From positions 744,001 to 808,000 of the forward strand of contig BQFW01000006.1 of NCBI GenBank assembly GCA_020891255.1: DNA of 64,000 nt, in the 5' to 3' direction. The translations under genes were made by a program, and so were the position numbers. Positions within the stretch are counted from its first letter, which is position 1. Every line of letters starts with the position of its first letter. The notes beneath the pieces were generated by a model that worked only from the letters and a program-made list of their open reading frames with translations, was not told the origin of the DNA and did not search any database. Shown here piece by piece: positions 4,132 to 51,814 of the stretch. Origin of the DNA: Entomortierella parvispora E1425 (Eukaryota; Fungi; Mortierellomycota).

Positions 4132-7100
4132 ATGAGGGAACCCAATTTTTCGTTCCCGCAACTCAACCGGGCCGCCATCTGCATCACCAGCTCGATCTAC
4201 GATCGCCGTGCCCTGGATTGTACCGATTATCTGCCCATGATCAACACCCTGACGAATCTAGCCTACCTCACCGGCTCCACCCCTACCATCCGTGAGTACA
4301 TTGTCCGCGACGGAGGACTGGAGACTTTGGTGACTATCCTCAAAAAAACTAAAGTCAATGACCGGAAAAACGGACTCAAGTGGACCCTGGCCTTCCAGTG
4401 TGTTGTCAACATTGGTGTACGTGGTACAGAGCATATCCGGAAACGTGTCGTCCAAGCAGGAATGGTCCCCATCATTGTTCATGTCCTCGAGTCCTTCTTT
4501 GAAGTCCTCAAGTCTGTGAGCGATGAGAACGAACGGCGGAGATTACAACGACGACAGGAGGCCATTGCGGCCGGAGTAGGAACAGAACAGGGCGGCGTTG
4601 TCGCAATACAGGCGCCCTTCACTCACGCAGGAGTATCAGGACCAGCGGCGTCGTCAGGAGTGGCTGCAGGCATGGTGAGCGCTGATGATAACAATGGGGC
4701 TGGCTCTTCAAGTGCTGCCGCTGAGAGCATCAGCGCCGATGCAGCTCTCGAGACTCGCCAGTCGATCATCAACGGACTTGTGGCAGCCTCTGGCGGCGTT
4801 GTCGACTCTTCCAACAACTCGTCTTCTTCTTCGCTCTCATCGACGACTGCGCCCGCTCTCAGTTCCACCCTCAGTACAGCCACCACCTCCACAACCGCTT
4901 CTTTAATTCTTCCGAATCCTGCAGGACCGGCAGCCGCCGCTGCAGGCTCCTCTGCAGCCTCAGCCCACGCAACACACGAAAATGCAGCTTCGCCATACAC
5001 CAGTCCAGTACCGACGGCCCAACGTCCTCATCGCCAACATCCAACTGGAACCGCCGCAACAGGAGGCGTAACCACAGCGCCCACAAATCCAGAGGGAGGG
5101 GCGCAAGAACAGCAGCCACCTTTTGCACAATTCTTTTACAGGGAAGACGACATCCTGCATTCCCTTCAGTTGCTGGCGTACCTTTCAAAGTACCCATCAC
5201 TACGATCTTCCTTCCACACAGAATCGGGATCGAACGTTTTTGCGATTGTGGAAAAGTTTACGCACCGGAGTATGCATCCTGTCGAGATTCAATACTGGGC
5301 AGGAGTGATTATGCGAAATGCCTGCCGCAAGGACGACAGTCGCAAAGGAATCCGTCAATGCGCTTATACTGGATGTGGCAAATGGGAGACTCGACCCAGA
5401 GAGTTTGCCAAGTGCCGTCGGTGTCGTAAAGCCAAGTACTGCAGCAAACAATGTCAGTCCAAGGCATGGAGCGAAGGTCACCGTTGGTGGTGTGTGGAAA
5501 AGAAAGCTGACGGGACAAACTCCAACACAGGATCCAACTCTTTTGGTTCCGACCTCCCACCAGCTCCACCGCCACCACCTCCTCCTCCACCACCACCGCC
5601 AGCAGATCTACAAGACCAACCGGATGCAGGAGCAGACATGATGGAGAACGGCAGGATTAACGCCTCAGGAATGATGGGCGGTGGTCAAGCAGGTGGCAAC
5701 GGAGGCGGAGGAGGTGGAGGAGGTGCTGGCGCAACGACTCGTGCAGTAGGTTCCGTTCACTATCCACAGCTTCATCAGGCACAGTCGGACCTTCACTCTG
5801 ACAATGGGCGGACCGAACAAAGGTCGGATTATCATCGACATTATCCACAACAGGAAGAGGGATCGCACTCCAGGTCAACAGGCAACACCGACTCACAATC
5901 GCGGCCACCTCATCAAGCTGCTCCACCGCACCATAATGAAACCTTGCTTCGCCTGCAGCAACGACAAATGGAGCAGCGTGCGCGGCACCAGCAGGACCGC
6001 CATCGATCGAGCGCCTCCGAATCCCAGCACTCACAGCAGCCTAGGCCAGATCGCTCTTATTATCCCGAATCTCGATCACGAGAACACAGTAGCGAGCATC
6101 TCCGCCAGCACCCTCAACGACCTCAACATCAATCACAACCAATGCCCCATCCTCACCATCCACATCAACGAGCTTACCCACCCCACCTCTCGTCAATGAG
6201 CTCCCCTGCCCTGCGTCCTTCAGAACATGCCTATCCACGGCCTGGTGGACCAGGACAAGCGCCACCGCAACGATCCCAGACCCTTCCCAACTTTTCGACG
6301 CCTTCCCCTAGAACCCCAGCATCGCCCATGTCTCCTATGGCAGCCGCAGCATCTGGATCCGGTGCAGGTGTTGGTCTATCGGCCCCGATGATTAATGAAG
6401 AATCGACCTCCACTTCCAGGGAGGTCTCTCAACCACATTTGGGGGTCTCTCCAGATTCACCGACGCCCGATCAATTGGCCCAGCAGTTTGTGCAACAGGT
6501 GGCTCTTCACCCTGGAAAGCACAACGAGTTGGCTCAGAATTTGAATGCGCAGTTCAAACGTTACTTCCCTCCAGAGCACCAGGCCGAGGCCAAGAAACAG
6601 TTTTCGTTCAGAGCACGAGAGCACTTTGCGAGATATCAGCGTCAGCAGGAGCTGCTAAGGGCAGCAGGAGCTGCCGCTTTAGCGAGTCGAACAGCGGCTG
6701 CTGTAGGGGCTGCTGGGTCGGGGTCTGGTTCTGGAGCACCCCCTCGCCCTTCTCAGGGACGTTTGCCTCACCAGGGCATCGCCCCATCTGGACCCTCTGC
6801 TCAAGTGCGGCCGCAACAGCCTACATCTGAACCTTCACATCCATGGCCCCAGGCTCAATCACAGCACCCCTACTTTCAACAGCGTGCGGGTCCATCCAGT
6901 TCGTCGTCTCTGTCTTCACCGCCAGTGACGGCAGGCACGGCGAGACTGCGGTCTGAGCTGAGTTCGGATGACGAGAATGTACCGGGTTATGGCACAGAGT
7001 CAACGGCTCATTCAAAGCGAGTTGCGAAAGAAGGACCTGTTCGGAACGAGTCTGGACCCACGAGTTGGAAGAATGACGGCAGCAGCAGCAGCAGTGGCGG

Positions 7101-11200: not shown

Positions 11201-13763
11201 GATCACGGACGATGACTTCCGCGCTTACTTGTTCACGGGCCACAAGTTCCTGCACGACGAGATCAAAGTCGCGGCAGGAATCGTTAACCTGCTTCGCCCA
11301 TTTGCCCCGAGGAAAGATCAATCTGGCCATATTCCACGGCACATACTGGCAACGGGACCATTCGTCTACTTGGCAAATCTACTTTTACGAGCAATGGGAT
11401 TTCAAGATTTCACCAGAGAGATTTCTCCCATCTCGTCTGCGGGTAGCATCCATGCCATTCCGTTAGGATCGATAGGATTGACACAAGTCCTATGTTGTCC
11501 TGACAAGGGACACTTTGACGTCCACAGCCAGCGAGGAGAGTTACTTTCCAAACCAGAGCTAGCAGTCGATCATTCCTCTCTGATCTTTGCCGCGTTCTTC
11601 AAAATGGAGACAGTAAACTCCATTTGCAAAGCACATGGACTCGAGTTTGCGAACAGGTAAGCGATGCAGAGCTGGTGAAGAGAGGCATGGTACTTTCAGA
11701 GCATTTTTTTTTCTAACGCACCTCATTTTCTATCGAACTTTAAAACGATCGTAGGATGATGTTTGTTGACCACCAGACTGTACGGATCCTGGGGCGTAAA
11801 ACAAAACTAGGCGCACCTTCGGACTTGACGAAAAAGAAAAAAGGCAAAAAGGCTACAAGGAAGAACTGGCAACCATCGGATGCAGACCTCCGACAGTTGA
11901 AATTGGAAGAGTCCAAGTTGGACAAGTCTACGGCCAAGGAGCGAGCGGCAGAGTTGGGAGAAGCGATTAAGGACAGCGAAATAGATATGAAGGGTCTAAA
12001 TCGCCAAGCAGCAAAACTGGAGCTGTCGGTTAAAAAATACAAATCAGAACTCCAGCAGCTCAAAGGAGACGATCACATGGCCGACGAAAGCGCAGAGGTC
12101 GAGGACTGCTTGAACAAGGATCGGCAAGAGCTCTACGACATACGACGTCAAATTATTCCGCAGAAAGTTGCCCTCAAAAATTTGCGGCAGAAGAAGTATG
12201 ACTACGACCGATACAGCAAATCCTCCTTGTCAGCACCGTCAAAAAAGAAGGACAGGGAGCAACCTGACGCTCCAACTATGACCACCCCAACATTGAGCCG
12301 ACCGGGCTGTATGAACAAGACCGAGTCCGTTGATATCAGCACACTTCTACGCGATATTGACGCCAACAATGCAGATCCAACGGCACGCAAAGTGCAACTT
12401 GTACCGGGGGGAACGGACCCAGGGTCCCACATACTTTTTAACACCGTCCCAGTCCCAATGGCTTCGCTCATCAAGCTTCAGAACAGATTTGAGGTCTTGG
12501 CGGATGGAAAGGACCCGGACGATGGACTGCCGTCACTTGAGAGTATGAAGTTCCCTGATGCGCACCAGACAACCACTCAGCAGCTACGCCACCATGCTGG
12601 ATTGAATAAGAGGGCAGAGAAACGACGTCGCTTGATTTCATCCAACAGAGCCGTGTCGGACGCCCATTCTCTGCTGGCCGAGAACTCCATTAAAAAAGCC
12701 CATTGCATCCAGGACGTTGAGCAAGCCCAGACAATCCGGAGAGGGACTCGCACGACTCTTCAAGGCTTTGAACAGTCAAAAAAAATGAGGAACAGCCGCC
12801 GAAGAGGAGAACTCGAGCTGAAACGCACATATGACAGGGCAGCTGCTGAAGAGAGGAAAGCGTTCGGGAAGCAACCTTGCGGTAAGTCATGCAACTTGCA
12901 ACTTCAGTCTTTAGTCTTGATTTTTTTTTTTTTTGTGAGATACAACAATAGACGACATCGTACTAATTGCAAACTTTTCTGAAAATAGGTGAAGATGCGT
13001 TCACGAAAAAGCTAGAGAAGAACGGACAGTGCACCTCTTGCAATACACACCACCGACCCGAGCTTCTCCCAGATCCATAAGACCCCTCCAAACGTCGCCT
13101 AATCCTGAAGCACGTTACCGATTGTCCGAAGACCAAGCCCAGAGTAATACCCTTATTCTTACACGGCGCCGCTGGTTCTGGCGTAGGCTCTCGTCTGAAG
13201 GGTCGCGCTAAAATGGGTGGTAGTAAAATCCCTCAGAGGCACATGTGCTCCTCTCCGGTTTGCAAGACCAACGAACATCTTTCTTCACAGACGTGCCCGC
13301 TATGCTTTCAGCTGCTTCGACTTGCAAGAGGGAGACGGTGGCGAAGAGGCATCCACAAGCTGGTCCGGCTACATGGGGCAGTCGAATGTTTTAATCCAGA
13401 TTGTGCTGCATTCAGGCGCGGATACACACAGAGAGGAAGAGACACGAATGCATCGATGAACATTGCTTTGGCAGGATTTTCGCTCCTGCTCTCACCAGAA
13501 CGCCGCCCAATCGCGCCGTTCGACCCACAGGCCCCCGCTTTGGCGTGCCCAACAACCACAGACACCAGTGCGTTACCAGCTGGATACCAAAAACTTTCCC
13601 CTCGCATCGAAGCAGATGCCGAAGCGGACGCGGATATCTGTCCGAGTTATGTAAGTACTCTAAGATCAAATTGCTTTCTGGCCCTATTATAATTGTTAGC
13701 CCGAGTTCAAATCGACCCACTTACTTTGTTTACGCTTCCGTTTTATGCTAACAGACACTGTAA
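8289..13763 (+). CDS. Giant multi-exon Fanzor (eukaryotic TnpB-like RNA-guided nuclease), ~1614 codons, interrupted by one in-frame TAA (possible pseudogene)
   Basis: Predicted exons 8289-8399, 8492-9120, 9198-9804, 9881-11030, 11107-11656, 11755-12881, 12989-13650, 13755-13763 join in phase through GT-AG introns. RuvC-I GGTDPG (D 12416-12418), GxGVGSRLKG motif, RuvC-II TNEHLSSQTCPLC (E 13273-13275), Zn finger C..C, RuvC-III RDTNASMNI (D 13441-13443). TAA at 13078-13080. Confidence 0.82.
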
Positions 13764-41756: not shown

Positions 41757-43583
41757 CTAGACCTGGATCTGAGCATCCTGTCTGAACTTGGCCATGCGGG
41801 CCTCAAGCTCGGGACGGAAGTGGCGGATCAAACCCTGAACAGGCCAGGCGGCGGCATCTCCCAAAGCGCAAATGGTGTGACCCTCGATCTCACGAGACAA
41901 CTCCTCGATCATGTCAATCTCGCGAGGACGGGCCTGGCCGTTCTCGAAACGAGCCATCATGTTGGCGAGCCAAGAAGTTCCCTCACGGCAAGGTGTGCAC
42001 TGTCCACAGGACTCGTGCTTGTAGAAGGCAGAAAGACGGGAAATGGCAGAGACGATATCAGTGGACTTATCCATGACAATGACAGCGGCTGTTCCCAAAC
42101 CGGACTGGACATCACGAAGAGCATCGAAATCCATGAGAACATCGTCGCAAATGTTACGGGGCAAGACTGGGACCGAGGAACCTCCGGGAATGATTCCCAA
42201 GAGGTTATCCCAGCCTCCCTTGACACCACCGCAGTGCTTCTCGATGAGCTCCTTCAATGGGATAGACATCTCTTCCTCGACTGTGCAGGGGTTGTTGACG
42301 TGTCCAGAGATGCAGAACAACTTGGTACCGGCGTTACGGGGGCGACCGAATCCGGCGAACCACTTGCCTCCGCGTCTCAAGATAGTGGGGGCAACGGCGA
42401 CAGTTTCGACGTTAGCTACGGTGGTGGGGCATCCGAAGAGACCGACATCGGCGGGGAATGGGGGCTTCAGGCGAGGCTTTCCAGCCTTGCCCTCGATCGA
42501 CTCGATCAAGGCGGTTTCCTCACCGCAGATATAAGCACCAGCACCACGGTGAATGTACACATCGAAATCGTATCCGGAACCGCAAGCGTTCTTTCCGATC
42601 AAACCGGCCTTGTAGGCTTCATCAATAGCGACCTGGAGGTTGGAAGCCTCGTTGTAGAACTCTCCACGGATATAAATGTAGGCTAAGGGTAAAAAAACAG
42701 AGTGAACTCGTGTAAGGATTACCGCTATAGATTGCGCAACCGACTCTACTACAAACAAATAAACAGGAAAACGTACCGGCATTGGCGTTCATGGCACGAC
42801 CAGCGACCAAGCATCCCTCGACCAACTTGTGGGGATCACCACGCATAATCTCACGATCCTTGCAAGTACCGGGTTCGCCCTCATCGGCGTTAACGACCAA
42901 GTAACGGGGACTATTGAATAAAAAAGTCGTAGTGGTGAGTACTCAAGTATAAGAGTTTAGGCAGACATCCTTAATGCTAGGCACTTGACAGCGCGTCAGG
43001 CTTTCCGAGTTTTTGTTGTTTTTAATCCAAGTTACATCCAAATGCTCGCTCCTTGATGTCCACCGGCAGTATTCAACTCGAATTATGTAGATCCATAGTG
43101 TCCAAGAATGTAATTCCGAGAACGTGCAAAAATCCTGTTTCCCGTAGCTTTGATCTAAAACGAATATGAGCAGTTCCAAGCAGCCATCGCTTACCGGCCA
43201 TCCGAGGGCTTGTTCATGAAACTCCACTTCAATCCGGAGGGGAAACCAGCACCACCGCGTCCACGGAGACCGGACTCCTTCATCTCGTTCAAGATCCAGT
43301 CATGACCCTTGAGAATAATCTCCTTGGTCTTGTGCCAGTCACCACGCTTGAGAGCTCCCTTGAGCTTGTAGTCGTGGAATCCATAAATGTTGGTAAAGAT
43401 GCGGTCCTCGTCCTTCAAGTTTCCGAAGGAGGTGCGGACTGGTGGAACCGCAGCCTCGGAGGCGAATGAGCGGACAGCAGTCTTGACGATGATGTTGCGA
43501 GTCTGACGCGTGCTGGCCAGGAAGGCTGTAGTCGACAAACAAGTCAATGGAGAGCGTGTCAAAGGAACCAAAAGACGGGACAT
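41757..43583 (-). CDS. NDUFV1: NADH:ubiquinone oxidoreductase 51-kDa flavoprotein subunit (multi-exon)
   Basis: Mitochondrial presequence; [20 protein letters not shown]; [15 protein letters not shown]; [16 protein letters not shown]; [12 protein letters not shown]; [13 protein letters not shown]. Confidence 0.97.
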
Positions 43584-44039
43584 ATAGAGAGATAGAACGA
43601 GAAATAGACGTGATTAGCAACAAGATTCTGCACAGGGTAAAAGTGCTGCATGTCCATGATCCGGAGAGATTTGACTAGATTTGCCGAGAGTCAAATTGCT
43701 CAGCGTTGTGAGAATGATCATGATCGTCGCGGTCAAGTAGTTAAATGTTTTAGAGAGTTGTTGGGGTAGAGGCATGATTTGAGTGATCTGAGATGCGGCG
43801 TGGGTCTGGTCTGATCCCGATCCATGTTATATTTTCATCCGAGGATGAAAGTGCCACAAGGTGAAAGTCAAAGATGGGTAGACGGTGATGCAGTTGTAGA
43901 TGGCAAACTGGCCACGGCGATGTTTACCCTTTGACGACAACATGTCTAGCGGAGAGGGGGGAGGGAGACAAAGGGAGAGTGGAGAGAAGTGATGAGATGG
44001 GCGGATTCACTGTCTCTGGGTGATGTTGGTTCGGAATTC

Positions 44040-44135
44040 CGAGAGGCGAACCCCCGAAAGGAAGTGGCACAATTGAATCTATTTGACACGTCACCGAAGA
44101 TGACGCATCGCACAGACCCCGCCACTTCCCAAACT
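44040..44135 (-). ncRNA. Putative Fanzor omegaRNA (scaffold ~44135-44060 plus flank-derived guide from 44059 downward)
   Basis: Lies downstream of the Fanzor stop (44186) and ends at the TIR. GGAAGUGGC (44129-44121) pairs with terminal GCCACUUCC (44068-44060) and encloses the hairpin CGUCAUCUUCGGUGACG (44105-44089). Boundaries are inferred. Confidence 0.72.
44051..44059. repeat. 9-bp target-site duplication CCCCCGAAA, left copy
   Basis: Identical 9-mer at 51806-51814 directly abuts the other TIR. Confidence 0.92.
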
Positions 44136-44185
44136 CAGCCCGATGTATTTGCTGATACACAAAATGGACTGACTAAAATAAGTAT

Positions 44186-47100
44186 CTACTCCTCTGCTTC
44201 TCGCTTGACTTGATCGGGGTCATTCTCCATTTGTCGTTTGACTTGATCCTGTCCTCCCTCTGACCAATTGAGTGGCGCCTTTCGTTTGACTCCGCGAGCC
44301 GTGGATTTGACACTTAGTGTGGCTTCGGGGGAAGAAGGTACCCTCTGTGCGCTGAGCACCGTAGCACGTCTGCCCCCACGACCATCCTCCCACGGATATT
44401 TCCCTTCTGCATCCACAGGTTGAAGGTAACGAGGCCGTTGCTGTTTGGTAATGTGCCCCTGAACAACATTCGCTATGTTGTGCCCACCCATCACATCTCT
44501 GTGAAAGTAGGTCTTACAGTAGGAACAGTACAGCCGTCGAATGTTCACTTGGCCGACGAAGTTTTCACAGCCCGGACACTTTTTGGAGGTGTAATACTCG
44601 TTAACACCAACCACTATGTATCCAAGCGACCGTGCCTAGAAAGCAATTGATGTTAAACTTGATATAATGATATGAAAAATAAAAAAAAATAAAAAAGGAC
44701 CAGAGCACTATACCTTTTGGACAAAGTATGACTGAAAGGTCCCATGGAGGGAGGACAATCTCATTGTCGAGGAGAAGTCACCAAGACCAATACCAATGAC
44801 AACCTTGTTTTCGGGATCTCTTTTTGATCCCAATGACCCTCCAACAAGACTCAAAAGTTGGTTTGCGATAAGCCTATATTCTTCCACCTTGGCTTTCTGG
44901 GCGTTCCATCTGTGTTTTTTCAGAACGACATTGTCATAAAACTGTTCGAGCGGGGCACCCTTTTCTTTCAAATGCTGGACGTAATCCTTGATAGATGCCT
45001 CTGGACCACGAACAGGTGGTAGACTCGATTCCAAGTCGGCAACCGACAGTGTTCCTCCCAAAGTTTTTTTTTTCCTATGCTCTAGCCAGCTTCTGTGTCT
45101 AAAGACAGGTTGGTATACGGCCTTTTGCTTTACGGACAGGTTGAAAAAACGCTGCTTCGCAGGAATGGCAGTTGCTCCACCTTGTGAAGGTAAGATAGCA
45201 CTAGCCCCAACAACGAAGGCCTGTCCTAAGTCGATTCCCAATATTTTGATCTTCTCAGGATCGACGCCATCGCCCCAGAGTCGGTGGACATCTTCCTTGG
45301 ATTTGACGACATTCCTGATCTCCGTCAGATAGTAATCCAACCCACCCAAAGTAGAGGCAATGCGGTCAGGTAGCTTCTCTGGAGCAAGACGGCGGTACTT
45401 CACACAATTCAGCTCGTTGAGTTTGAACCCAAGTACTTGAAGACGGAATCCATCTGTCCTAATCGACCCTCGTAGGAGATATCCGTTGGCGGCATAGGTC
45501 TTGGGATCGAAGGTCGCTTGAGATATGTTGCTCAGATGAGTCATAACTTCTGGAAGTGACATGGTCCTTGCTGACCTTGAGAAGCTCCTCTTCTTTTTTC
45601 TCTCTTCCGCGCTGTATCCCCCGATGTCGGACAAGAGGCTGTTGATGAGTAGGCCAGGCTTGGAATATCCTAGCCACATCGCAACAACATCTTGGGTGAT
45701 TTTCTCGAATCGATGGACGTTAACCGTATGGAAGGCGAATTTCTGCAACTGTTCTTTCAAGGCCTGGTCCTGCCAGAAGAGCTTTATCAAGTCAAGCTCT
45801 GAGATGTTAACAAACGTGCTGTCCATAGGTGATATCGGGGTAACACATCGTTTGGACCCTGTGATTCGGTTTAGGATGATGAAGTTCTCCACTGGAGATA
45901 GCTTCAAATCGATATTGTCCACCGTGTTCGGAGGCAGTATACCCTTCTTCTTAAGAGCACGAATCTGAATAGGAGCACGCGAGGAGGTCATTAATACTTG
46001 AGAGAAAGAAATATTAACCCGAAATCGGCAGCAGGCGCAGACTATTATTGTTACCTTTTTGCAAAGATCAAGAGAGCCATGTTTGTAGTGCTTCATATAC
46101 TCAATAGTAAGATTCAGCGCAGTTGATTGAAGAACAGAAGAAGAAGGATATGGCCCTGCCGCTATCGATATGAGGACGAGGAGACCAAACGATAACATGT
46201 TAGATAGAGAATAGAGATGCTCAGGCACATGCAGACAAACCATTTAGTCATAGTAAGCACTTGATGACATCAAATTTACCATTGCCATTCTGCGGAGGCA
46301 AGAAGTCCTTTGCTTTGATCAGGAATTCGCGAACCGCACACACTGAATCCGAGTCCCCCTTTTCTTTCTTCACCTTTGCCTTGTCAGCGTTCGATGCGGT
46401 GTTTTTTTGCTCAACCGAGGGTGTTTGGTCGCTGGAAGACGTTTGGTCGGTGTAAGACAATTGATCGGTGGAAGACGATTGATCGGTCGAATGAGGCTTG
46501 TATTTGGCCTTAAATGCAGCCAATCTTGCTGTCTGTGACATTTTCGGAGGTTCCGAGTTGTAAATGCTCGACAGAAGTGACAAGAAAAAACTGGAGAGAC
46601 TTGTTCTTCTTAAACATCTCGTCATCTGCCTCGACGCTGGTCGTATTGAGCTCATTGCGTTCTCCTGGATCCTCGTTGTCTTCCAAAGCAGATCCCTCAG
46701 CAGGAAGCTTGTCTCCGGCAACGAAGGGCTTGCACAACATGCCAAGGATAAGCTTGTCATTCTTGTCAAGATTATCCATAGACAGGGTCTCCAAGTATTG
46801 CCCTATTGCTAGCTGGCATGCCCTCTTCGTCGCTGTCGCCAATCGTGCAACATTTGACAAGCAGGTCTTAATTCGAGGCAAATGTGACGCAGGAAGCAAC
46901 GTCCTTTGTAGAGCTCGAGTGACATTCGCGTTTAGAGTGCCTACATCCATGACTCGAAGGGGATGTTGCCGCTGGAGCTCCTTGACAAGCCGCATCTTAT
47001 CCATTGTCCGGAAATTAGGCGGATCTTTTGTCACACTCTCGCTTGATTTCGTTGTGGTGGGAAGCACAGGTCGAGGGGGAGGTTCTGTCCACGGCTTTAA

Positions 47101-48527
47101 AGTGTACTGCTTCAGAACATCTGGGGGGTCGTGCTCAATGATGCGGGACCTCGTTTTGATGGCGTACCGCTGGCGATATTTGTATTTCCTGCCAGACGCG
47201 TGAGGAGATGGCGAAATTGCAGGTTGACTGTCGACAGTGTTGTACCGATTAAACTTATACTCAATATCGCCAGTATGGGCGACGGGCAGGTTGGAAGAGG
47301 ACCTAGAAGACGATAATGATACCTTGTTAGTGACTGGAGAACACAGTCTTGCTTTCAAGTGCTGAAGTGCTGAGTGAAATGAAGAAAGTCCATACCCTTC
47401 ACTCCTAACAGTCTTGAGTTGGCTCTGCAAACTTCTCAGCCTCGCAGTTATTTCTGTCAGAGACGGGGAAGAACGCGGCTGATTCATCGTATCCTCATAA
47501 CAGGCTTGGGGCAGCAGAGTTTGATCCCAAAAGGTAAATTCTTGTCGGGCAAATACCTTCAGGGCCGAGTCGAAATATGAATTGCCAGGATCCTTAATGA
47601 TCACCTCCGGATGGGTCAAATAGGCACGAATCAATTCGTTGACATCTAATGGGGGGTCTTCACAAAATAGGGCTGTTAGTTGGTACTAAAGCATCCATCA
47701 TGGCAATGCATTGGTGGGAGGGACCAAAAGTACATAGAACAGATGTTACCTTTGTCACGCAATGATTGGAGGACCTCATAGTTGGTGACTATGCCCATTT
47801 GCTTCAAATTGCAGGAGTAGTCGTTCCGACAAACAACACCAAGAGCTGTGAGACCCGCCCTGGTTAGCTGCAAATGTATTAACAGCTTCGGGACGTCGTA
47901 CTCAAGGTATCCTCCCCTGGCAAGTGGCCTCCAAATTGTAGTGATCGAAGAAAGATGGACGAGACTATCACTGTCACCAGAGACAACAATATCCTCAGTG
48001 CGGCAATTGAGTGCAATCTGGATGTCAGCCTCTGATGGACATTGAATGACACTCCAGCCCTTTGCTATTAAGAATTGAGCAAGCGACTCGCGAAGGTCGG
48101 CAGAGAGATAAAATGCTGCGTTAAGCCCTTTGTTGAGTTTCCTGAATTGCTGTTTCTTGAGCTTCTTTTTCTGCCGAAACATATCCTCCATCTCATGCAA
48201 CAGCGAGTCCGCTTTCGTCAGGGATGTTGAGCAACGAGCCTCACGCAAGGCTCTTGTTGCGCGTTTCTCCTCTGGGGATGGTCCGTCCATATAGAGAAGA
48301 GTCGTTGCTGGAGGAAATTTAAGAGACCGGAGCTTCATCTCGAAGATGGAATTGGCCATCACTGGGTCGTGTTTGAGGAATGTGCGGCGAATGAGAGGGT
48401 ACATTGAGCCCAAAATATCGACATGAAAGGTTGTATTCGGGGGCCGAGAATGCTGGGGGCAGTTGGAAAGAACGTCGGGGAAGTATCCCTTCTTCTTGAC
48501 GAACGGCCATAAGAAAGGGACGCCCAT
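44186..48527 (-). CDS. XPG/FEN1-family (PIN-like) nuclease - Fanzor RuvC fusion protein, ~1330 aa, 5 exons, one +1 homopolymer frameshift
   Basis: Exon 1 48527-47750: MGVPFLW, FHVDILG, YMDGPSPEEK, SEADIQIA, SGDSDSL, GVVCRNDY. Phase-1 intron 47749-47673 joins it in frame to the next exon. RuvC-I ILGIDLG (D 45230-45232); last exon from 44635 ARSLGYIVVGVNEYYTSKKCPGC...YCSYC...HRDVMGGHN. A6 run at 46585-46590 has one extra base. Confidence 0.88.
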
Positions 48528-48881
48528 AGCAAAAGGCCCGGCGGAAGATAAAGGGCAACCAGGGATTGAGCGAGGAAGTAAAGGTGTATAAAAAATATGT
48601 GGGTGGTTGGGAGGGTGGGTGGAAGAGGGGAGGTCAGAAGGAGCGACAGAGCAGAAGGAAGTTGGGAAGAAAGGCGTGTCTTTTAAGAATCCTGGTGAAG
48701 GAAGGATGGGAGTGGGAATTTTTTGCCACCACTTTTGTTCCCAGTTCAAATTCAAGCCACTTGGTTGCACAAAATAGTTTGTGTTCCTGTTTTCATTTTT
48801 TTCCCGCCTTCCCGCCGCCGCGCTTCCCGCCACCGCGCTTCCCGCGTTTGTCCTCTTGCCTCCTGCTCCATTGCATGCCCC
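48528..48881. promoter_or_regulatory. Divergent (bidirectional) promoter region between XPG-Fanzor and MULE transposase
   Basis: 354 bp between head-to-head ATGs (48527 minus, 48882 plus); TTCCCGC x4 GC repeats at 48801-48845. Confidence 0.6.
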
Positions 48882-51634
48882 ATGGCCAGCCTTCGAGTGA
48901 AGGACATCCTCCTGCAGCCCGAGGACTTTGATCCCCGCGAGATATACACGCCCAACAACATTTCTCAGGAGCACGAGATCTGGAGGGCATCACTCTCCAT
49001 CGAGGAATTCAAAACGTTTTGGCATCGAGAGCGGACAGCAATTCAATTTGAACATCGTGTTGAAGGAGGATGCAATCACCATCTCTTGAAAGGTGACCCA
49101 AACGCCTTACTTCCAACCTACCGCCCTGCACCTCCCTTTGGTAGCGCTCCAGGGGGACAAAAGAGGTTCGATTGGAGTTTCCGCTTCACATGCAGAAGGT
49201 ACAGGCAGATCAATGATAATTTGACCATCAAACGCACATCCGTTGGACAGAGATGTCCTGTTTCTATCCGGATGAAAAAGCCTGTAGGGAGAGAGCTTGT
49301 GGTTGTAGAGTATCAATGGAGACACAATCATGACGACTCCGCGGAAGCACGAGCCAGAATTCCATTGAGCAGAAACGAATTGATGTGGACCAAGTCCCAG
49401 GCAAAGAACAACCAGAGGTGGACTTCAATTAAAGATCTTCTCCGTCCAGTTAACCAGGCAGCGATGTCCTTGGTAAGCAAGGTCCCAGACTTTGAACGTT
49501 AATCAGTGAAGAGGTATTTCCAACTGATGTACTCATATTTCCGTTGCTGTGATTTAGCTCGCGAGCACGACACCAGGAAGCCCGTTGAGCCCTGCTGCAT
49601 ACATGAAATACAAGCATGTAAAATCTGCCATCTACCGCTCAAAGACGTCTTTGTCCCGTAAAAGTATTAACCCCACCCTGAGTATCAAACTTTGGATGAA
49701 TGATATTCAAGCACATGGTGGCAAGAGTACGTTCGTCCCGAAAGTATCAGGGATCGACAATAATTACTTCTTTGCCTGGTCTACCAAATTTCAGCTGGAG
49801 GTAGGCATTGCTTTTTGATGTCTGTGTTTCCCATACCATACTCCCACTTACAAACACTATCCATGTTACTTCGTTGACCAGATTATGGCTAGGAACACGG
49901 GGATCGTGTGCATGGACTCTACTCACAAGACAGTTAAATCACTGTTACCTGATCCTAAGGATAAAAAAAGCGTGCCCTTCCGCGTACCTTTTCACCCTCC
50001 TTGTCCGAGATCGTCAGGCAAACTGTGGAGTGCCCGTGGCTTTTATGGTCTGCAATTCAGAATCCATGTAAGTTTCAGAGTATACCACAACTGATCCATT
50101 GCATTCTGAGGATGCAACAATGAACTAAATGGCCTTTTTTTTTTTTTTTAGAAATACTCTGAGACTCTGGCTAAAATGGGTTTCCGATCACTGTGGTATC
50201 AATGCAACCAAATTCATGGTGGATTGCTCCCAGGCGGAGTCAGAAGCGATATATCAGGCCTTCATGACCTCGGTAGATATTTACTATTGTACATTCCATG
50301 TTGCTCAAGCGTGGGAGAGGAAATCCAAGGAACTGTACGGAGTAAGTGTGTGAGAAAAGTGCGTTGCCGCCCGGGTAACAGATTTTGTGATGAAGCAATT
50401 AATTCTCATGTTGCAACAGGTCAAAGTCTGTAATGATTTACGTGGGCCACTGAAACGGATCCGAACCGCCGAAACTGAGGAGGAGCTTGCTAGAAGATGG
50501 GACAGCTTCACAGAAACATACAAAAAATACGACAAGATGATCAGTTACTTGAGAGCATGGATGACACCTGAGAAAAAAGTGAAGTGGGTGCTGTACATAA
50601 GAAAAGTAAAGTAGGCCATGGTTTGCAGAAGGACTGAAAGTCGAGTCAAGTTTGTATGACCTTTACTCTCTAACCATTTCAGCACTTCTTTCAAATTAAA
50701 CTAGGACTATCAACATACAAATACTAACAACCTTGTGGAGTCCTGGCACAAGACATTGAAGAGACGGCATTTGCAAAAGAGACGTAATTTACGTGCCGAT
50801 GACTTGGTGTTTATATTGCAAGGAAAAGTGGATATCGATTTTCAGGACACTTTGTTCAAAATCTCCCGAAATCTTGTTGAGAGACCACTGTCGACGTATG
50901 ACAAAGAAAGAAAGAGTAAAGCGATGGGTCTGGAGCATACCACTGCGATTCAGATGGTTAGATTACAGCTCCCTGCCATCAAGGTACCTCCACTTGCTGT
51001 TGCAAGTTTTTCTTTTGCTCCGCTCATCACGGTCACTTGCTTAACAGCTTCATATTATCACCCTACACTTCCTTAGTTTGATGTTCAATCCTTTCGATCT
51101 GCAGCTACATGGTATTCAATCCGTGTAGATAGAGACTTCAATCTCATCCTTGCATGCACATGCTCTGATTACCGCCAACATCTGTTGCCATGTAAGCACA
51201 TGTACCTTGTGGAAAGATTTCACGAAAGCATGAAGATATCATACACAGGAGAGCCAGCTGACGACCCCGAGGATGTGCTTGTTGATGAGCTTGCTATTGG
51301 GGAATCCCTGGAGCAAGCCAACCAAGACCTAGACATCTTTGGTCCCGATCTGGAAGCAGGGATTGGTCCCTTGCTCCGGCTTCAACTTGACCAACAGCGG
51401 GCCAAGGAGCAAGAAGCTCGTAGGGCTGCCAGAGAACAGGCCGTCCTTGCTGAATTTGAACACAATAAGGCGGAACTGAAAGATATGGCGAATCAAATTG
51501 TTGCGACTGTGGAGGCGAGAAAGGGGCGAAAATGTACCTTGGAGTATCTCAAAAGTACTGTGGCGGCTTTAAGAAACACTGTGTTGGAGATCAAGGGTCT
51601 TAACTCAGGGAACACCGGGCGGACTTGTCAGTAG
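48882..51634 (+). CDS. MULE (Mutator-family) DDE transposase with SWIM zinc finger, multi-exon, one +1 homopolymer frameshift
   Basis: N-terminal FAR1/WRKY-like C..C..HNH segment; catalytic VCMDSTHKT, KFMVDCS, YCTFHV (CxxH), TNNLVESWHKTLK; SWIM CTCSDYRQHLLPCKH. A7 at 49963-49969 has one extra A relative to the frame encoding YLFTLLVRD...GVPVAF. Confidence 0.92.
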
Positions 51635-51805
51635 TGGATGGATCAAATAAAGGGACTTAAAGTCAACGGCGCGTCGATTGACCAGTTGTCGATTGACCAT
51701 TGTCCATTGTCCATTGTTCGATTGACGATGGCGGGCCTTGTCGGACTTCGAAGGGGTCAAGCAAGAAGTCACGTTCCGAGCCATAGAAGCAATTGTGCCA
51801 TTTCC

Positions 51806-51814
51806 CCCCCGAAA
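51806..51814. repeat. 9-bp target-site duplication CCCCCGAAA, right copy
   Basis: Directly follows the right TIR ...gtgccatttcc. Confidence 0.92.

What the first reader, a model, noticed from the sequence alone, without database searches (positions are those of the whole stretch)
44051..51814. Complete MULE transposon with TIRs and 9-bp TSD carrying the XPG-Fanzor head-to-head with its transposase
Seen: TIRs of 23 bp (20/23 identical, GGAA start), a perfect 9-bp TSD CCCCCGAAA, and two divergent genes filling the 7746-bp element. Established: 9-11-bp TSDs and DDE+SWIM transposases define Mutator elements. The TIRs here are very short for a MULE. Intact TSD, TIRs and catalytic residues suggest a recent insertion. 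Inference: a self-contained module of transposase, RNA-guided nuclease, accessory nuclease and guide RNA that could act as a homing/drive element.
Basis: partly seen in the sequence, partly recalled or inferred. Interest (0 to 1): 0.86.

Follow-up and report, generated by a model that had tools for sequence, protein, structure and literature searches.

The report
Mutator transposon carrying a Fanzor nuclease
This is a real 7.7-kb Mutator-type jumping gene in a Mortierella-family fungus that carries its own transposase plus a Fanzor (probably RNA-guided) nuclease fused to a flap-nuclease domain; the design recurs in related fungi, but both genes in this copy have a one-base frameshift as assembled.

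Summary
A perfect 9-bp duplication (CCCCCGAAA, 44051-59 and 51806-14) flanks 23-bp inverted ends (20/23) around a 7,746-bp element. It is the only such configuration in the window (about 3e-5 expected by chance).

Inside are two divergent genes 354 bp apart:
- a seven-exon Mutator-like (MULE) DDE/SWIM transposase;
- a four-exon, 1,355-codon XPG/FEN-like-Fanzor fusion.

The 130 nt after the Fanzor stop, up to the element's last base, form a structured region conserved between species. This is where a guide (omega) RNA would be expected.

The same two-gene design, with its own ends and 8-9-bp duplications, occurs in Podila clonocystis, Gamsiella multidivaricata and Mortierella sp. GBAus27b. Another strain with the holder's species label has about four ~91%-identical copies, and one of its contigs starts exactly at base 44060. 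That strain and two others lack the element at this site.

Not supported: "intact". Each gene has a single-base homopolymer frameshift as assembled, either real or an assembly error. The homing/drive idea remains untested inference.

Fanzor in MuDR-type elements without a transposase was published in 2013. I found no paper describing an autonomous MULE-Fanzor. This scan had already noted similar two-gene elements and many XPG-Fanzor fusions elsewhere in this genome.

The parts
44051..44059 (.). Left target-site duplication CCCCCGAAA
   Evidence: identical 9-mer at 51806-51814.
44060..44082 (+). Left (Fanzor-proximal) terminal inverted repeat, starting GGAAGTGGCACAATTG
   Evidence: (I2, 20/23). 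A multi-copy contig of strain X5 starts with its first letter at 44060 (record 3). The terminal pattern G..(9-10 nt)..CAATKG is shared with L003 and L006.
44060..44185 (-). Conserved structured non-coding region between the Fanzor stop and the element end (candidate omega-RNA scaffold). Stem-loop 1 is about 44134-44174. The terminal hairpin is 44060-44129, where the TIR tip (44060-68) pairs with an inverted copy at 44120-28. The motif ACGTCACCGAAG sits at 44088-44099.
   Evidence: RNA fold z = -5.4 in Fanzor sense against -2.8 antisense. The same two-hairpin architecture appears in L003, L006 and L002 although their TIR sequences differ. Two of 6 pairs in hairpin 1 show compensatory changes. 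TTCGGTGACGT is invariant in window, L003, L006 and L007; L002 has TTAGGTGACGT. The right ends are unstructured, z about 0. No Rfam match and no RNA data.
44186..48527 (-). XPG/FEN-like-Fanzor fusion gene. Model exons: 48527-47750, 47672-46280, 46161-44714, 44635-44186; 1,355 codons. A 1-nt frameshift lies in the T6 run at 46585-46590.
   Evidence: GT-AG introns of 77, 118 and 78 nt. Pfam Cas12f1-like_TNB at 37.6 bits, cut-off 26.3. RuvC D1034 (45230-32), E1219 (44597-99) six residues before the CPGC...CSYC zinc finger, and RD at 1252-53. Atlas features for exon 3 score 0.97 to DUF8286/TNB clusters of Mucoromycota and giant viruses. X5 copies lack one base at 46585, which joins the two frames.
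47750..48527 (-). XPG/Rad2/FEN1-like 5' nuclease domain (exon 1, residues 1-260)
   Evidence: phmmer against PDB: Rad2 catalytic core 4q0w at E 5.5e-5, plus XPG and FEN-1. Pfam XPG_I is below its cut-off, 16.9 against 24.9 bits. Acidic residues D37, D81, E166, D168, D185, D187 and D236 are present.
48528..48881 (.). 354-bp spacer between the two divergent start codons (presumed bidirectional promoter)
   Evidence: Gene models. The function is inferred; no RNA data exist.
48882..51634 (+). MULE-type transposase gene. Model exons: 48882-49472, 49558-49800, 49882-50067, 50152-50341, 50420-50605, 50705-50983, 51077-51634; 743 codons. A 1-nt frameshift lies in the A7 run at 49963-49969.
   Evidence: The model is colinear with independent gene predictions: P0161 over residues 1-511 at E 3e-104, plus P0196, P0192 and P0197. 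D290 (49915-17), D364 (50222-24), E477 (50738-40), CxxH (C386) and SWIM CxC...CxH (51155-51199) are conserved in the family alignment. P0161 sits among MULE/ZSWIM/FAR1 clusters by features (0.97) and by structure, TM 0.5-0.65. Relatives read through the A7 site in one frame.
51783..51805 (-). Right (transposase-proximal) terminal inverted repeat
51806..51814 (.). Right target-site duplication CCCCCGAAA

Best explanation
Window 44060-51805 is one copy of a Mutator-like (MULE) cut-and-paste DNA transposon family of Mortierellaceae fungi. It inserted 468 bp upstream of the NDUFV1 start codon and made a 9-bp target-site duplication. The element has two divergent genes. One is a DDE/SWIM MULE transposase, which by established MULE biology binds the ends, excises the element and reinserts it with a staggered 9-bp cut. 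The other is a 1,355-codon protein that joins an XPG/FEN1-type 5' nuclease to a Fanzor1-type TnpB-like nuclease. Downstream of the Fanzor stop codon, a conserved structured RNA-like region runs to the very last base of the element. This is the position from which Fanzor/TnpB guide RNAs read into the flanking DNA. The inferred working model has three steps. The Fanzor-omega-RNA complex recognises the flank of its own insertion site. It cuts copies of that site that lack the element, either after excision or in other nuclei of the coenocytic hypha. Repair from a filled copy then restores or spreads the element, with the XPG-like domain possibly processing the cut ends. Shown here: the boundaries, the gene content, the family conservation, the multi-copy status in another strain, and the asymmetric conserved structure. 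Inferred: all nuclease activities, the RNA itself, and any homing. As assembled, this copy has a one-base frameshift in each gene. It is therefore either a recently disabled copy or the victim of homopolymer assembly errors.
For: - Boundaries: TIR plus TSD are unique and non-random. In strain X5 the family is present at about 4.3 times single-copy depth and ~91% identity. One contig begins exactly at 44060, and another copy has a different flank.
- Absence elsewhere: the single-copy flank contigs of X5, X6 and X8 do not run into the element.
- Transposase: the spliced model is colinear with MULE-annotated Mortierellaceae proteins. D/D/E, CxxH and SWIM are conserved. Atlas places the homologue among MULE/FAR1/ZSWIM clusters. 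Sub-threshold Pfam MULE and SWIM hits point the same way.
- Fanzor: TNB domain above its cut-off, the Bao-Jurka motif and the rearranged glutamate (PMC3627910, PMC13565253), and Atlas features.
- XPG domain: Rad2/XPG/FEN-1 matches in PDB.
- Family: the same head-to-head design is found in Gamsiella multidivaricata L002, Podila clonocystis L003 and four copies in Mortierella sp. GBAus27b, L006-L009. Their termini are homologous, with TSDs of 8/9 (L003, L002) and 8-9 bp (L006).
- Omega-RNA-like end.
Against: - Both genes are frameshifted as assembled (A7 at 49963-69, T6 at 46585-90).
- No RNA run was listed, so splicing, expression and the omega RNA are unobserved.
- A clean empty allele was not seen. 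The X5 flank contig stops aligning at 44042, 17 nt short of the TIR, and I could not read what follows.
- Direct Pfam MULE and SWIM scores are below the curated cut-offs.
- The Fanzor body has no sequence match to solved Fanzor structures, and the AlphaFold model was unusable.
- MULE target sites vary (CCCCCGAAA, GGCGTGAAG, CAAGTCCG, CACCCCAC). A fixed TAM at empty sites is therefore not guaranteed, which weakens the homing step.
Confidence: 0.85

Rival explanations
1. The copy is a dead relic. The two frameshifts are real, neither protein is made, and the element can move only if supplied in trans by other copies, if it moves at all.
For: The A7 (49963-69) and T6 (46585-90) frameshifts break both reading frames. 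Relatives and X5 copies read through both sites. Other family copies also show decay: L008 has a 975-bp deletion and L007 has lost its right end.
Against: Both breaks lie in homopolymers, and there are no other stops in about 6.3 kb of coding sequence. The TSD is perfect. The holder run's contigs share only 0.96 of the sampled words with the assembly, which leaves room for several single-base assembly errors.
Confidence: 0.4
2. Fanzor is passenger cargo with no role in transposition. It would be a selfish nuclease gene captured by a MULE, much as MULEs capture other ORFs (mudrB, mutB, vanB/C), and the conserved left-end structure would be a transposase-binding or terminator element rather than a guide RNA.
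For: MULEs often acquire extra ORFs (PMC6446971). A related transposase in Lobosporangium has no Fanzor beside it. In GBAus27b the same transposase module sits with two very different Fanzor genes. The window's right end also has an ACGTGAC core about 30 nt inside.
Against: The pairing is kept in at least five genomes at 30-60% protein identity. The structure is found only at the Fanzor end. It is stronger in the Fanzor sense strand (-51 against -29 kcal/mol), and its arms co-vary with the TIR sequence. This fits an RNA read from the Fanzor transcript.
Confidence: 0.2
3. The TIR/TSD pair is a coincidence, and the two genes are independent neighbours rather than one mobile unit.
For: The TIRs are short and imperfect. 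L002 has only weak TIRs.
Against: The chance expectation is about 3e-5. A contig of another strain starts exactly at 44060. Homologous termini and TSDs occur in L003, L006 and L002. Copies in GBAus27b lose similarity exactly at these ends.
Confidence: 0.01

Closest known systems
[quoted passage not shown]
   Same: A Fanzor1 gene lies inside an element with MuDR-like TIRs and 9-bp TSDs, in an early-diverging fungus.
   Different: Those elements are reported not to encode a MuDR transposase. This family carries transposase and Fanzor together, head-to-head, and its Fanzor has an N-terminal XPG/FEN-like nuclease domain. Relatedness of the TIRs or proteins to ROr-4, PBl-3 or MCi-4 was not tested.
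Two-ORF autonomous MULEs such as maize MuDR (mudrA/mudrB) and Yarrowia Mutyl (mutA/mutB) (PMC6446971)
   Same: DDE transposase plus one accessory gene, TSDs of 8-11 bp, insertion near gene 5' regions. TIR length falls within the reported range of 14-500 bp.
   Different: Here the accessory gene is a TnpB-family nuclease fusion, not mudrB or mutB. The genes are divergent. The TIRs are 23 bp against about 200 bp in MuDR.
Autonomous Fanzor-carrying Mariner/Tc1 and Crypton elements (Jiang et al. 2023, PMC10530073)
   Same: Transposase and Fanzor lie within one transposon, and a structured non-coding RNA region sits at the Fanzor 3' end.
   Different: The transposase superfamily is different (Mutator). 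The TSD is a variable 9-mer rather than a fixed TA. The extra XPG domain is not described there.
IS200/IS605 and IS607 TnpA-TnpB-omega-RNA systems (restorative homing; review PMC13565253)
   Same: The same logic: a transposase plus an RNA-guided nuclease whose guide is read from the flank at the nuclease-proximal end.
   Different: Those elements have no TIRs or TSDs, and their insertion motif doubles as the TAM. Here a DDE enzyme makes variable TSDs, so how an empty site is told from a filled one is unexplained.

Membership tests
Mutator/MULE superfamily | Target-site duplication of 8-11 bp | tested here: met
   Perfect 9-bp TSD. Relatives: L003 8/9, L006 8-9 bp, L002 8/9. The definition comes from PMC6446971.
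Mutator/MULE superfamily | Terminal inverted repeats (14-500 bp in surveyed MULEs) | tested here: met
   23 bp, 20/23. The termini are homologous to those of L003 and L006.
Mutator/MULE superfamily | Transposase matches the Pfam MULE domain (PF10551) above its gathering score | tested here: inconclusive
   The domain is split over three exons here, and the pieces give no hit. Family homologues score below the 27.6-bit cut-off: P0197 at 21.4 bits, P0171 at 17.5 bits.
Mutator/MULE superfamily | MULE-type RNase H-like DDE core with conserved D, D, E and C/DxxH | tested here: met
   D290, D364, E477 and C386xxH389 are conserved in the family alignment. Homologue P0161 (34% identity over 511 residues) groups with MULE/ZSWIM1-3/FAR1 clusters by features (0.97) and structure, TM 0.5-0.65. 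UniRef names P0161, P0171 and P0197 as MULE-domain proteins.
Mutator/MULE superfamily | SWIM zinc finger CxCx(n)CxH after the catalytic core (common, not universal) | tested here: inconclusive
   The CTC...PCKH pattern is present and conserved in P0192 and P0215. Pfam SWIM scores 18.1 bits against a 19.6-bit cut-off.
Autonomous (self-mobilising) element | Uninterrupted transposase reading frame | tested here: not met
   A 1-nt frameshift in the A7 run at 49963-69, as assembled. Relatives read through in one frame. Real mutation and assembly error could not be told apart.
Fanzor1 / TnpB family | C-terminal TNB zinc-ribbon domain (PF07282) | tested here: met
   37.6 bits against a 26.3-bit cut-off, E 2.5e-9.
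Fanzor1 / TnpB family | Motif D-X(125,275)-[TS][TS]-X-X-C4 finger-X(5,50)-RD (PMC3627910) | tested here: met
   D1034, then T1222-S1223 188 residues later, CPGC (1226) to CSYC (1243), and RD at 1252-53.
Fanzor1 / TnpB family | Rearranged RuvC-II glutamate six residues before the zinc finger (PMC13565253) | tested here: met
   E1219 in NEYYTSKKC, with the first cysteine at 1226.
Fanzor1 / TnpB family | Omega RNA encoded at the 3' end and running past the element end into a guide | tested here: inconclusive
   A conserved, strand-biased, end-specific structure is present. No RNA run was listed and there is no Rfam family.
Fanzor1 / TnpB family | RNA-guided, TAM-dependent DNA cleavage | not testable with these tools
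   This needs biochemistry.
XPG/Rad2/FEN1 5' nuclease family | N and I regions with the seven-carboxylate active site | tested here: inconclusive
   PDB phmmer hits Rad2 at E 5.5e-5, and XPG and FEN-1 at about 5e-3. Pfam XPG_I is below its cut-off. Acidic residues sit at D37, D81, E166, D168, D185, D187 and D236. Their equivalence to the FEN1 residues rests on my recollection of FEN1 numbering.
OMEGA-type restorative homing element | The nuclease cuts the element-free allele and spares the filled one | not tested
   No empty allele sequence and no TAM are known. The variable TSDs make the discrimination rule unclear.

The most novel reading that the evidence does not exclude
A self-contained, TIR-bounded DDE transposon that carries its own RNA-guided homing system. 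The Fanzor-omega-RNA would read the flank of each new insertion and cut element-free copies of that site in sister chromatids or in other nuclei of the coenocytic mycelium. The fused XPG/FEN-like nuclease would resect the break and channel it into homology-directed copying. This would be a natural nuclear-level gene drive, and a natural exonuclease-nuclease fusion of the kind engineers build.
Probability: 0.2. Interest if true: 0.85.

Novelty: new variant of a known kind. Interest (0 to 1): 0.6.

Why it matters
The biological role of Fanzor nucleases in eukaryotes is still open. The best-studied Fanzor loci have no transposase within their inverted repeats (PMC10432273). The published MuDR-type Fanzor elements also lack a transposase (PMC3627910).

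This family is compact, cleanly bounded and present in several species. Transposase, nuclease and the presumed guide-RNA end sit in one unit with known ends and target-site duplications. That gives a concrete system for three tests:
- whether an RNA-guided nuclease helps a cut-and-paste DDE transposon persist;
- how a TAM-dependent enzyme copes with variable 9-bp target sites;
- what a fused 5' nuclease adds.

The fusion may also interest genome-editing work.

Tried and rejected
- Piecewise Pfam scans of the transposase exons gave no MULE hit.
- Exact-product look-ups of raw window ORFs found nothing on record.
- Cross-species empty-site search via NDUFV1 failed. The Mortierella alpina locus L001 and the metagenome contig L010 are only 80-86% identical in coding DNA and do not align upstream.
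- A word-index protein search with P0161 returned only itself. The same search with exon 1 found nothing above 72% identity, so the window's own species is not in that protein collection for this gene.
- No RNA run was listed, so I used the single read-laying run for a strain comparison. As a result I could not check homopolymer lengths in the source strain, nor see both junctions at once, because the element exceeds the 6-kb limit.
- Rfam gave no match.
- PDB sequence and profile searches with the Fanzor body gave nothing, and Pfam on that alignment gave nothing.
- AlphaFold on exon 3 with a 5-sequence alignment gave pLDDT 39. I judged it unusable and ran no fold search on it.
- RNAalifold on MAFFT alignments recovered only the small hairpin. 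The terminal hairpin is visible only in the single-sequence folds.
- A strict-consensus splice search found no solution. Introns were placed by hand and checked against homologues.
- L002 has no convincing TIR. Its ends were placed by homology plus an 8-bp repeat.
- Programmed frameshifting at the A7 run was considered and set aside, because relatives read the region in a single frame.
Full report
**1. Observation**

- CCCCCGAAA lies at 44051-44059 and again at 51806-51814.
- Directly inside these repeats are 23-nt inverted repeats, 44060-44082 and 51783-51805. They are 20/23 complementary and both begin GGAA (pair I2).
- The 16-nt core of the repeat occurs nowhere else in the 64-kb window (0.09 expected).
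- I enumerated all 10,190 pairs of identical 9-mers lying 0.5-20 kb apart. Only this pair is bordered by an inverted repeat of at least 16/23.
- Forty Markov-simulated windows gave best values of 13-17/23. The expectation for at least 20/23 is about 3e-5.

The element is 7,746 bp long. Its left flank is the NDUFV1 gene (41757-43583, minus strand), so the insertion lies 468 bp upstream of that start codon in a divergent intergenic region.

**2. The transposase**

The plus strand between 48882 and 51634 holds a run of open pieces separated by short GT-AG introns of 78-99 nt. My model has seven exons and 743 codons.

The model is colinear with independent gene predictions from other Mortierellaceae:
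- P0161 of Lobosporangium transversale: residues 1-511, 34% identity, E 3e-104;
- P0196: residues 131-513;
- P0197: residues 121-531;
- P0192: residues 393-743.

The family alignment conserves D290, D364, E477, a CxxH motif 22 residues after the second aspartate, and a C-terminal CxC...CxH SWIM pattern.

Direct Pfam evidence is weak, because the MULE domain is split across three exons. The scores are SWIM 18.1 bits against a 19.6-bit cut-off, and MULE 21.4 and 17.5 bits against 27.6 in homologues P0197 and P0171.

Stronger support comes from the homologue P0161. Its nearest Atlas clusters carry MULE, ZSWIM1-3 RNaseH-like, SWIM and FAR1 domains. The feature score is 0.97 and the structural TM 0.5-0.65. 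UniRef names it and two relatives as MULE-domain proteins. I therefore accept the Mutator-like assignment.

One correction is needed. In exon 3 the frame shifts by one base inside an A7 run (49963-49969), a few codons after the first catalytic aspartate. No intron can absorb it. Relatives read the homologous stretch in a single frame (L003 9570-9758; alignment).

**3. The Fanzor gene**

The minus strand from 48527 to 44186 gives a four-exon, 1,355-codon model with introns of 77, 118 and 78 nt.

Exon 1 is the XPG/Rad2/FEN1-like domain.
- phmmer against PDB finds the Rad2 catalytic core at E 5.5e-5, and XPG and FEN-1 at about 5e-3.
- Pfam XPG_I is below its cut-off.
- Acidic residues are present at D37, D81, E166, D168, D185, D187 and D236.

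The C-terminal half carries the Fanzor features.
- The Cas12f1-like TNB domain scores above its cut-off.
- The Bao-Jurka motif is complete: D1034, TS at 1222-23, a C4 finger, and RD at 1252-53 (PMC3627910).
- The catalytic glutamate sits six residues before the zinc finger, as described for Fanzors (PMC13565253).
- Exon 3 matches DUF8286/TNB clusters of Mucoromycota and giant viruses by Atlas features, score 0.97.
- It has no sequence match to solved structures, and my AlphaFold model was unusable.

This frame is also broken as assembled. A T6 run at 46585-46590 shifts it, and the multi-copy relatives in strain X5 have one base fewer exactly there, which joins the two frames.

The window's element thus carries two frameshifts, both in homopolymers, and no other stop in about 6.3 kb of coding sequence. 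The pattern is compatible with assembly error. The holder run shares only 0.96 of the sampled words with the assembly.

**4. The Fanzor-proximal end**

The 126 nt between the Fanzor stop and the left terminus are conserved across species. In window, L003, L006 and L007 the motif TTCGGTGACGT (Fanzor sense) is invariant at 27-29 nt inside the end; L002 has TTAGGTGACGT.

Folded as RNA in the Fanzor sense, the terminal 131 nt form two stem-loops in four elements:

| Element | z-score |
|---|---|
| Window | -5.4 |
| P. clonocystis (L003) | -4.3 |
| GBAus27b (L006) | -2.2 |
| Gamsiella (L002) | -1.4 |

- Hairpin 1 keeps its pairs through compensatory changes at two of six positions.
- In the terminal hairpin, the TIR-derived 3' end pairs with an upstream inverted copy. 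In the window this is 44060-68 against 44120-28.
- The TIR sequences differ between the four lineages, so the upstream arm has changed with them.
- The right ends show no such structure, z about 0.
- The antisense strand folds much less well, -29 against -51 kcal/mol.

This asymmetry and strand bias are what an omega-RNA scaffold ending at the transposon terminus would give. No RNA data were available and Rfam has no matching family, so the RNA remains inferred.

**5. Other copies and relatives**

Strain comparison by read laying on 42600-48500:
- Strain X5 has the holder's species label, and its flank is about 95% identical. Its contigs match the element at ~91% identity, at about 4.3 times the depth of the single-copy flank.
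- One of these contigs starts with its first letter at 44060. That is where a repeat-bounded assembly graph should break.
- Another X5 copy has a different flank.
- The single-copy X5 flank contig aligns to 44042 and then continues for 1,465 letters that do not match the element.
- X6 and X8 (88-90% identical flanks, one contig 14 kb long) cover the flank but have zero depth on 44176-48115.
- The element is therefore absent from this site in three other strains. A clean empty allele was not read.

Loci found through transposase homologues:
- The same head-to-head XPG-Fanzor / MULE-transposase design occurs in Gamsiella multidivaricata (L002), Podila clonocystis (L003) and four copies in Mortierella sp. 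GBAus27b (L006-L009).
- L003 has termini starting G[T/A]AAC..GGACAATGGGCGCGA and a TSD of GGCGTGAAG/GGCGTGAAA.
- L006 is delimited by loss of similarity between copies at 5283 and 12675, with CAAGTCCG on both sides.
- L002 has TCACCCCAC/CACCCCACA at the ends predicted by homology.
- All termini start with G and share a CAATKG core 10-11 nt inside.
- The Lobosporangium transposase has no Fanzor neighbour.

**6. Mechanism and its weak point**

Transposition by the DDE enzyme, with a 9-bp staggered cut, follows from established MULE biology.

The role of Fanzor is inferred by analogy with TnpB restorative homing (PMC13565253, PMC10432273). An RNA read from the Fanzor end into the flank would direct cleavage of element-free copies of that site, and repair would copy the element back.

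The difficulty is that IS605 and IS607 couple the TAM to a fixed insertion motif. The TSDs here share no motif across all elements. After insertion, the TSD also sits next to the putative target in filled and empty alleles alike. How the filled allele is spared is unknown. The XPG-like domain could process the cut ends, but that is speculation.

**7. Comparison with the literature**

- Fanzor1 in MuDR-type elements with 9-bp TSDs was reported in 2013 for Mucorales, explicitly without a MuDR transposase (PMC3627910).
- Later surveys list autonomous Fanzor-carrying Mariner/Tc1 and Crypton elements, and non-autonomous hAT, EnSpm and Helitron ones (PMC10530073).
- The Spu-1 Fanzor elements have no transposase inside their repeats (PMC10432273).
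- I found no paper combining Fanzor with Mutator transposases, Mortierella, or XPG/FEN1.
- MULE TIRs range from 14 to 500 bp and extra ORFs are common (PMC6446971), so 23-bp TIRs are not anomalous.
- This scan had already noted similar two-gene Mutator-Fanzor elements (s1-193909, s1-185128) and many XPG-Fanzor fusions in the same genome.

**8. Verdict**

This is a real, well-bounded member of a conserved Mortierellaceae MULE family with a Fanzor-fusion passenger and a probable guide-RNA end. It is a new variant of a known association. It is of moderate to high interest as a test system. This particular copy may be disabled.

Noticed in passing
L007:5213-12476 against L006:5283-12675 (Mortierella sp. 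GBAus27b): The two elements share a 95-98% identical transposase half and a 97% identical outermost 38 nt at the Fanzor end. Their XPG-Fanzor genes match only in short patches of 66-82% identity. These are mosaic elements, which suggests Fanzor module swapping or gene conversion of the transposase half.
   Followed up: partly
L008:5239-11695 and L009:5280-12728: L008 has a 975-bp internal deletion in the transposase and no TSD. L009 shares L006's right flank for more than 6 kb but has a different left flank. The cause could be ectopic recombination between copies or an assembly duplicate.
   Followed up: partly
window 44051-44059; L003:3287-3295 and 11475-11483; strain X5 copy (loose end at 44056): Beside the Fanzor-proximal TIR, the TSDs end in GAAA in the window and in GAAG on the left / GAAA on the right in L003. 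One X5 copy ends in GAAA, but that case is biased by alignment extension. L006 and L002 do not follow the pattern. This may be a weak target preference and may bear on the TAM question.
   Followed up: no
L004:10001-12042 and L005:3831-5872 (Lobosporangium transversale, two assemblies): A related 524-residue MULE transposase sits at the same host locus in two assemblies, next to an abhydrolase gene, with no Fanzor beside it. It may be a solo or domesticated copy.
   Followed up: no
window 46407-46487: Four tandem 18-nt repeats (repeat finder D1) encode the STDQ-rich low-complexity linker between the XPG and Fanzor halves.
   Followed up: no
window 44075-44114, strain X6 (record 8): A 40-nt match to the subterminal left-end region lies about 100 nt from the end of a 3.6-kb X6 contig, although X6 has no element of this family at 85% identity or more. 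It is probably the conserved end of a more distant family member.
   Followed up: no
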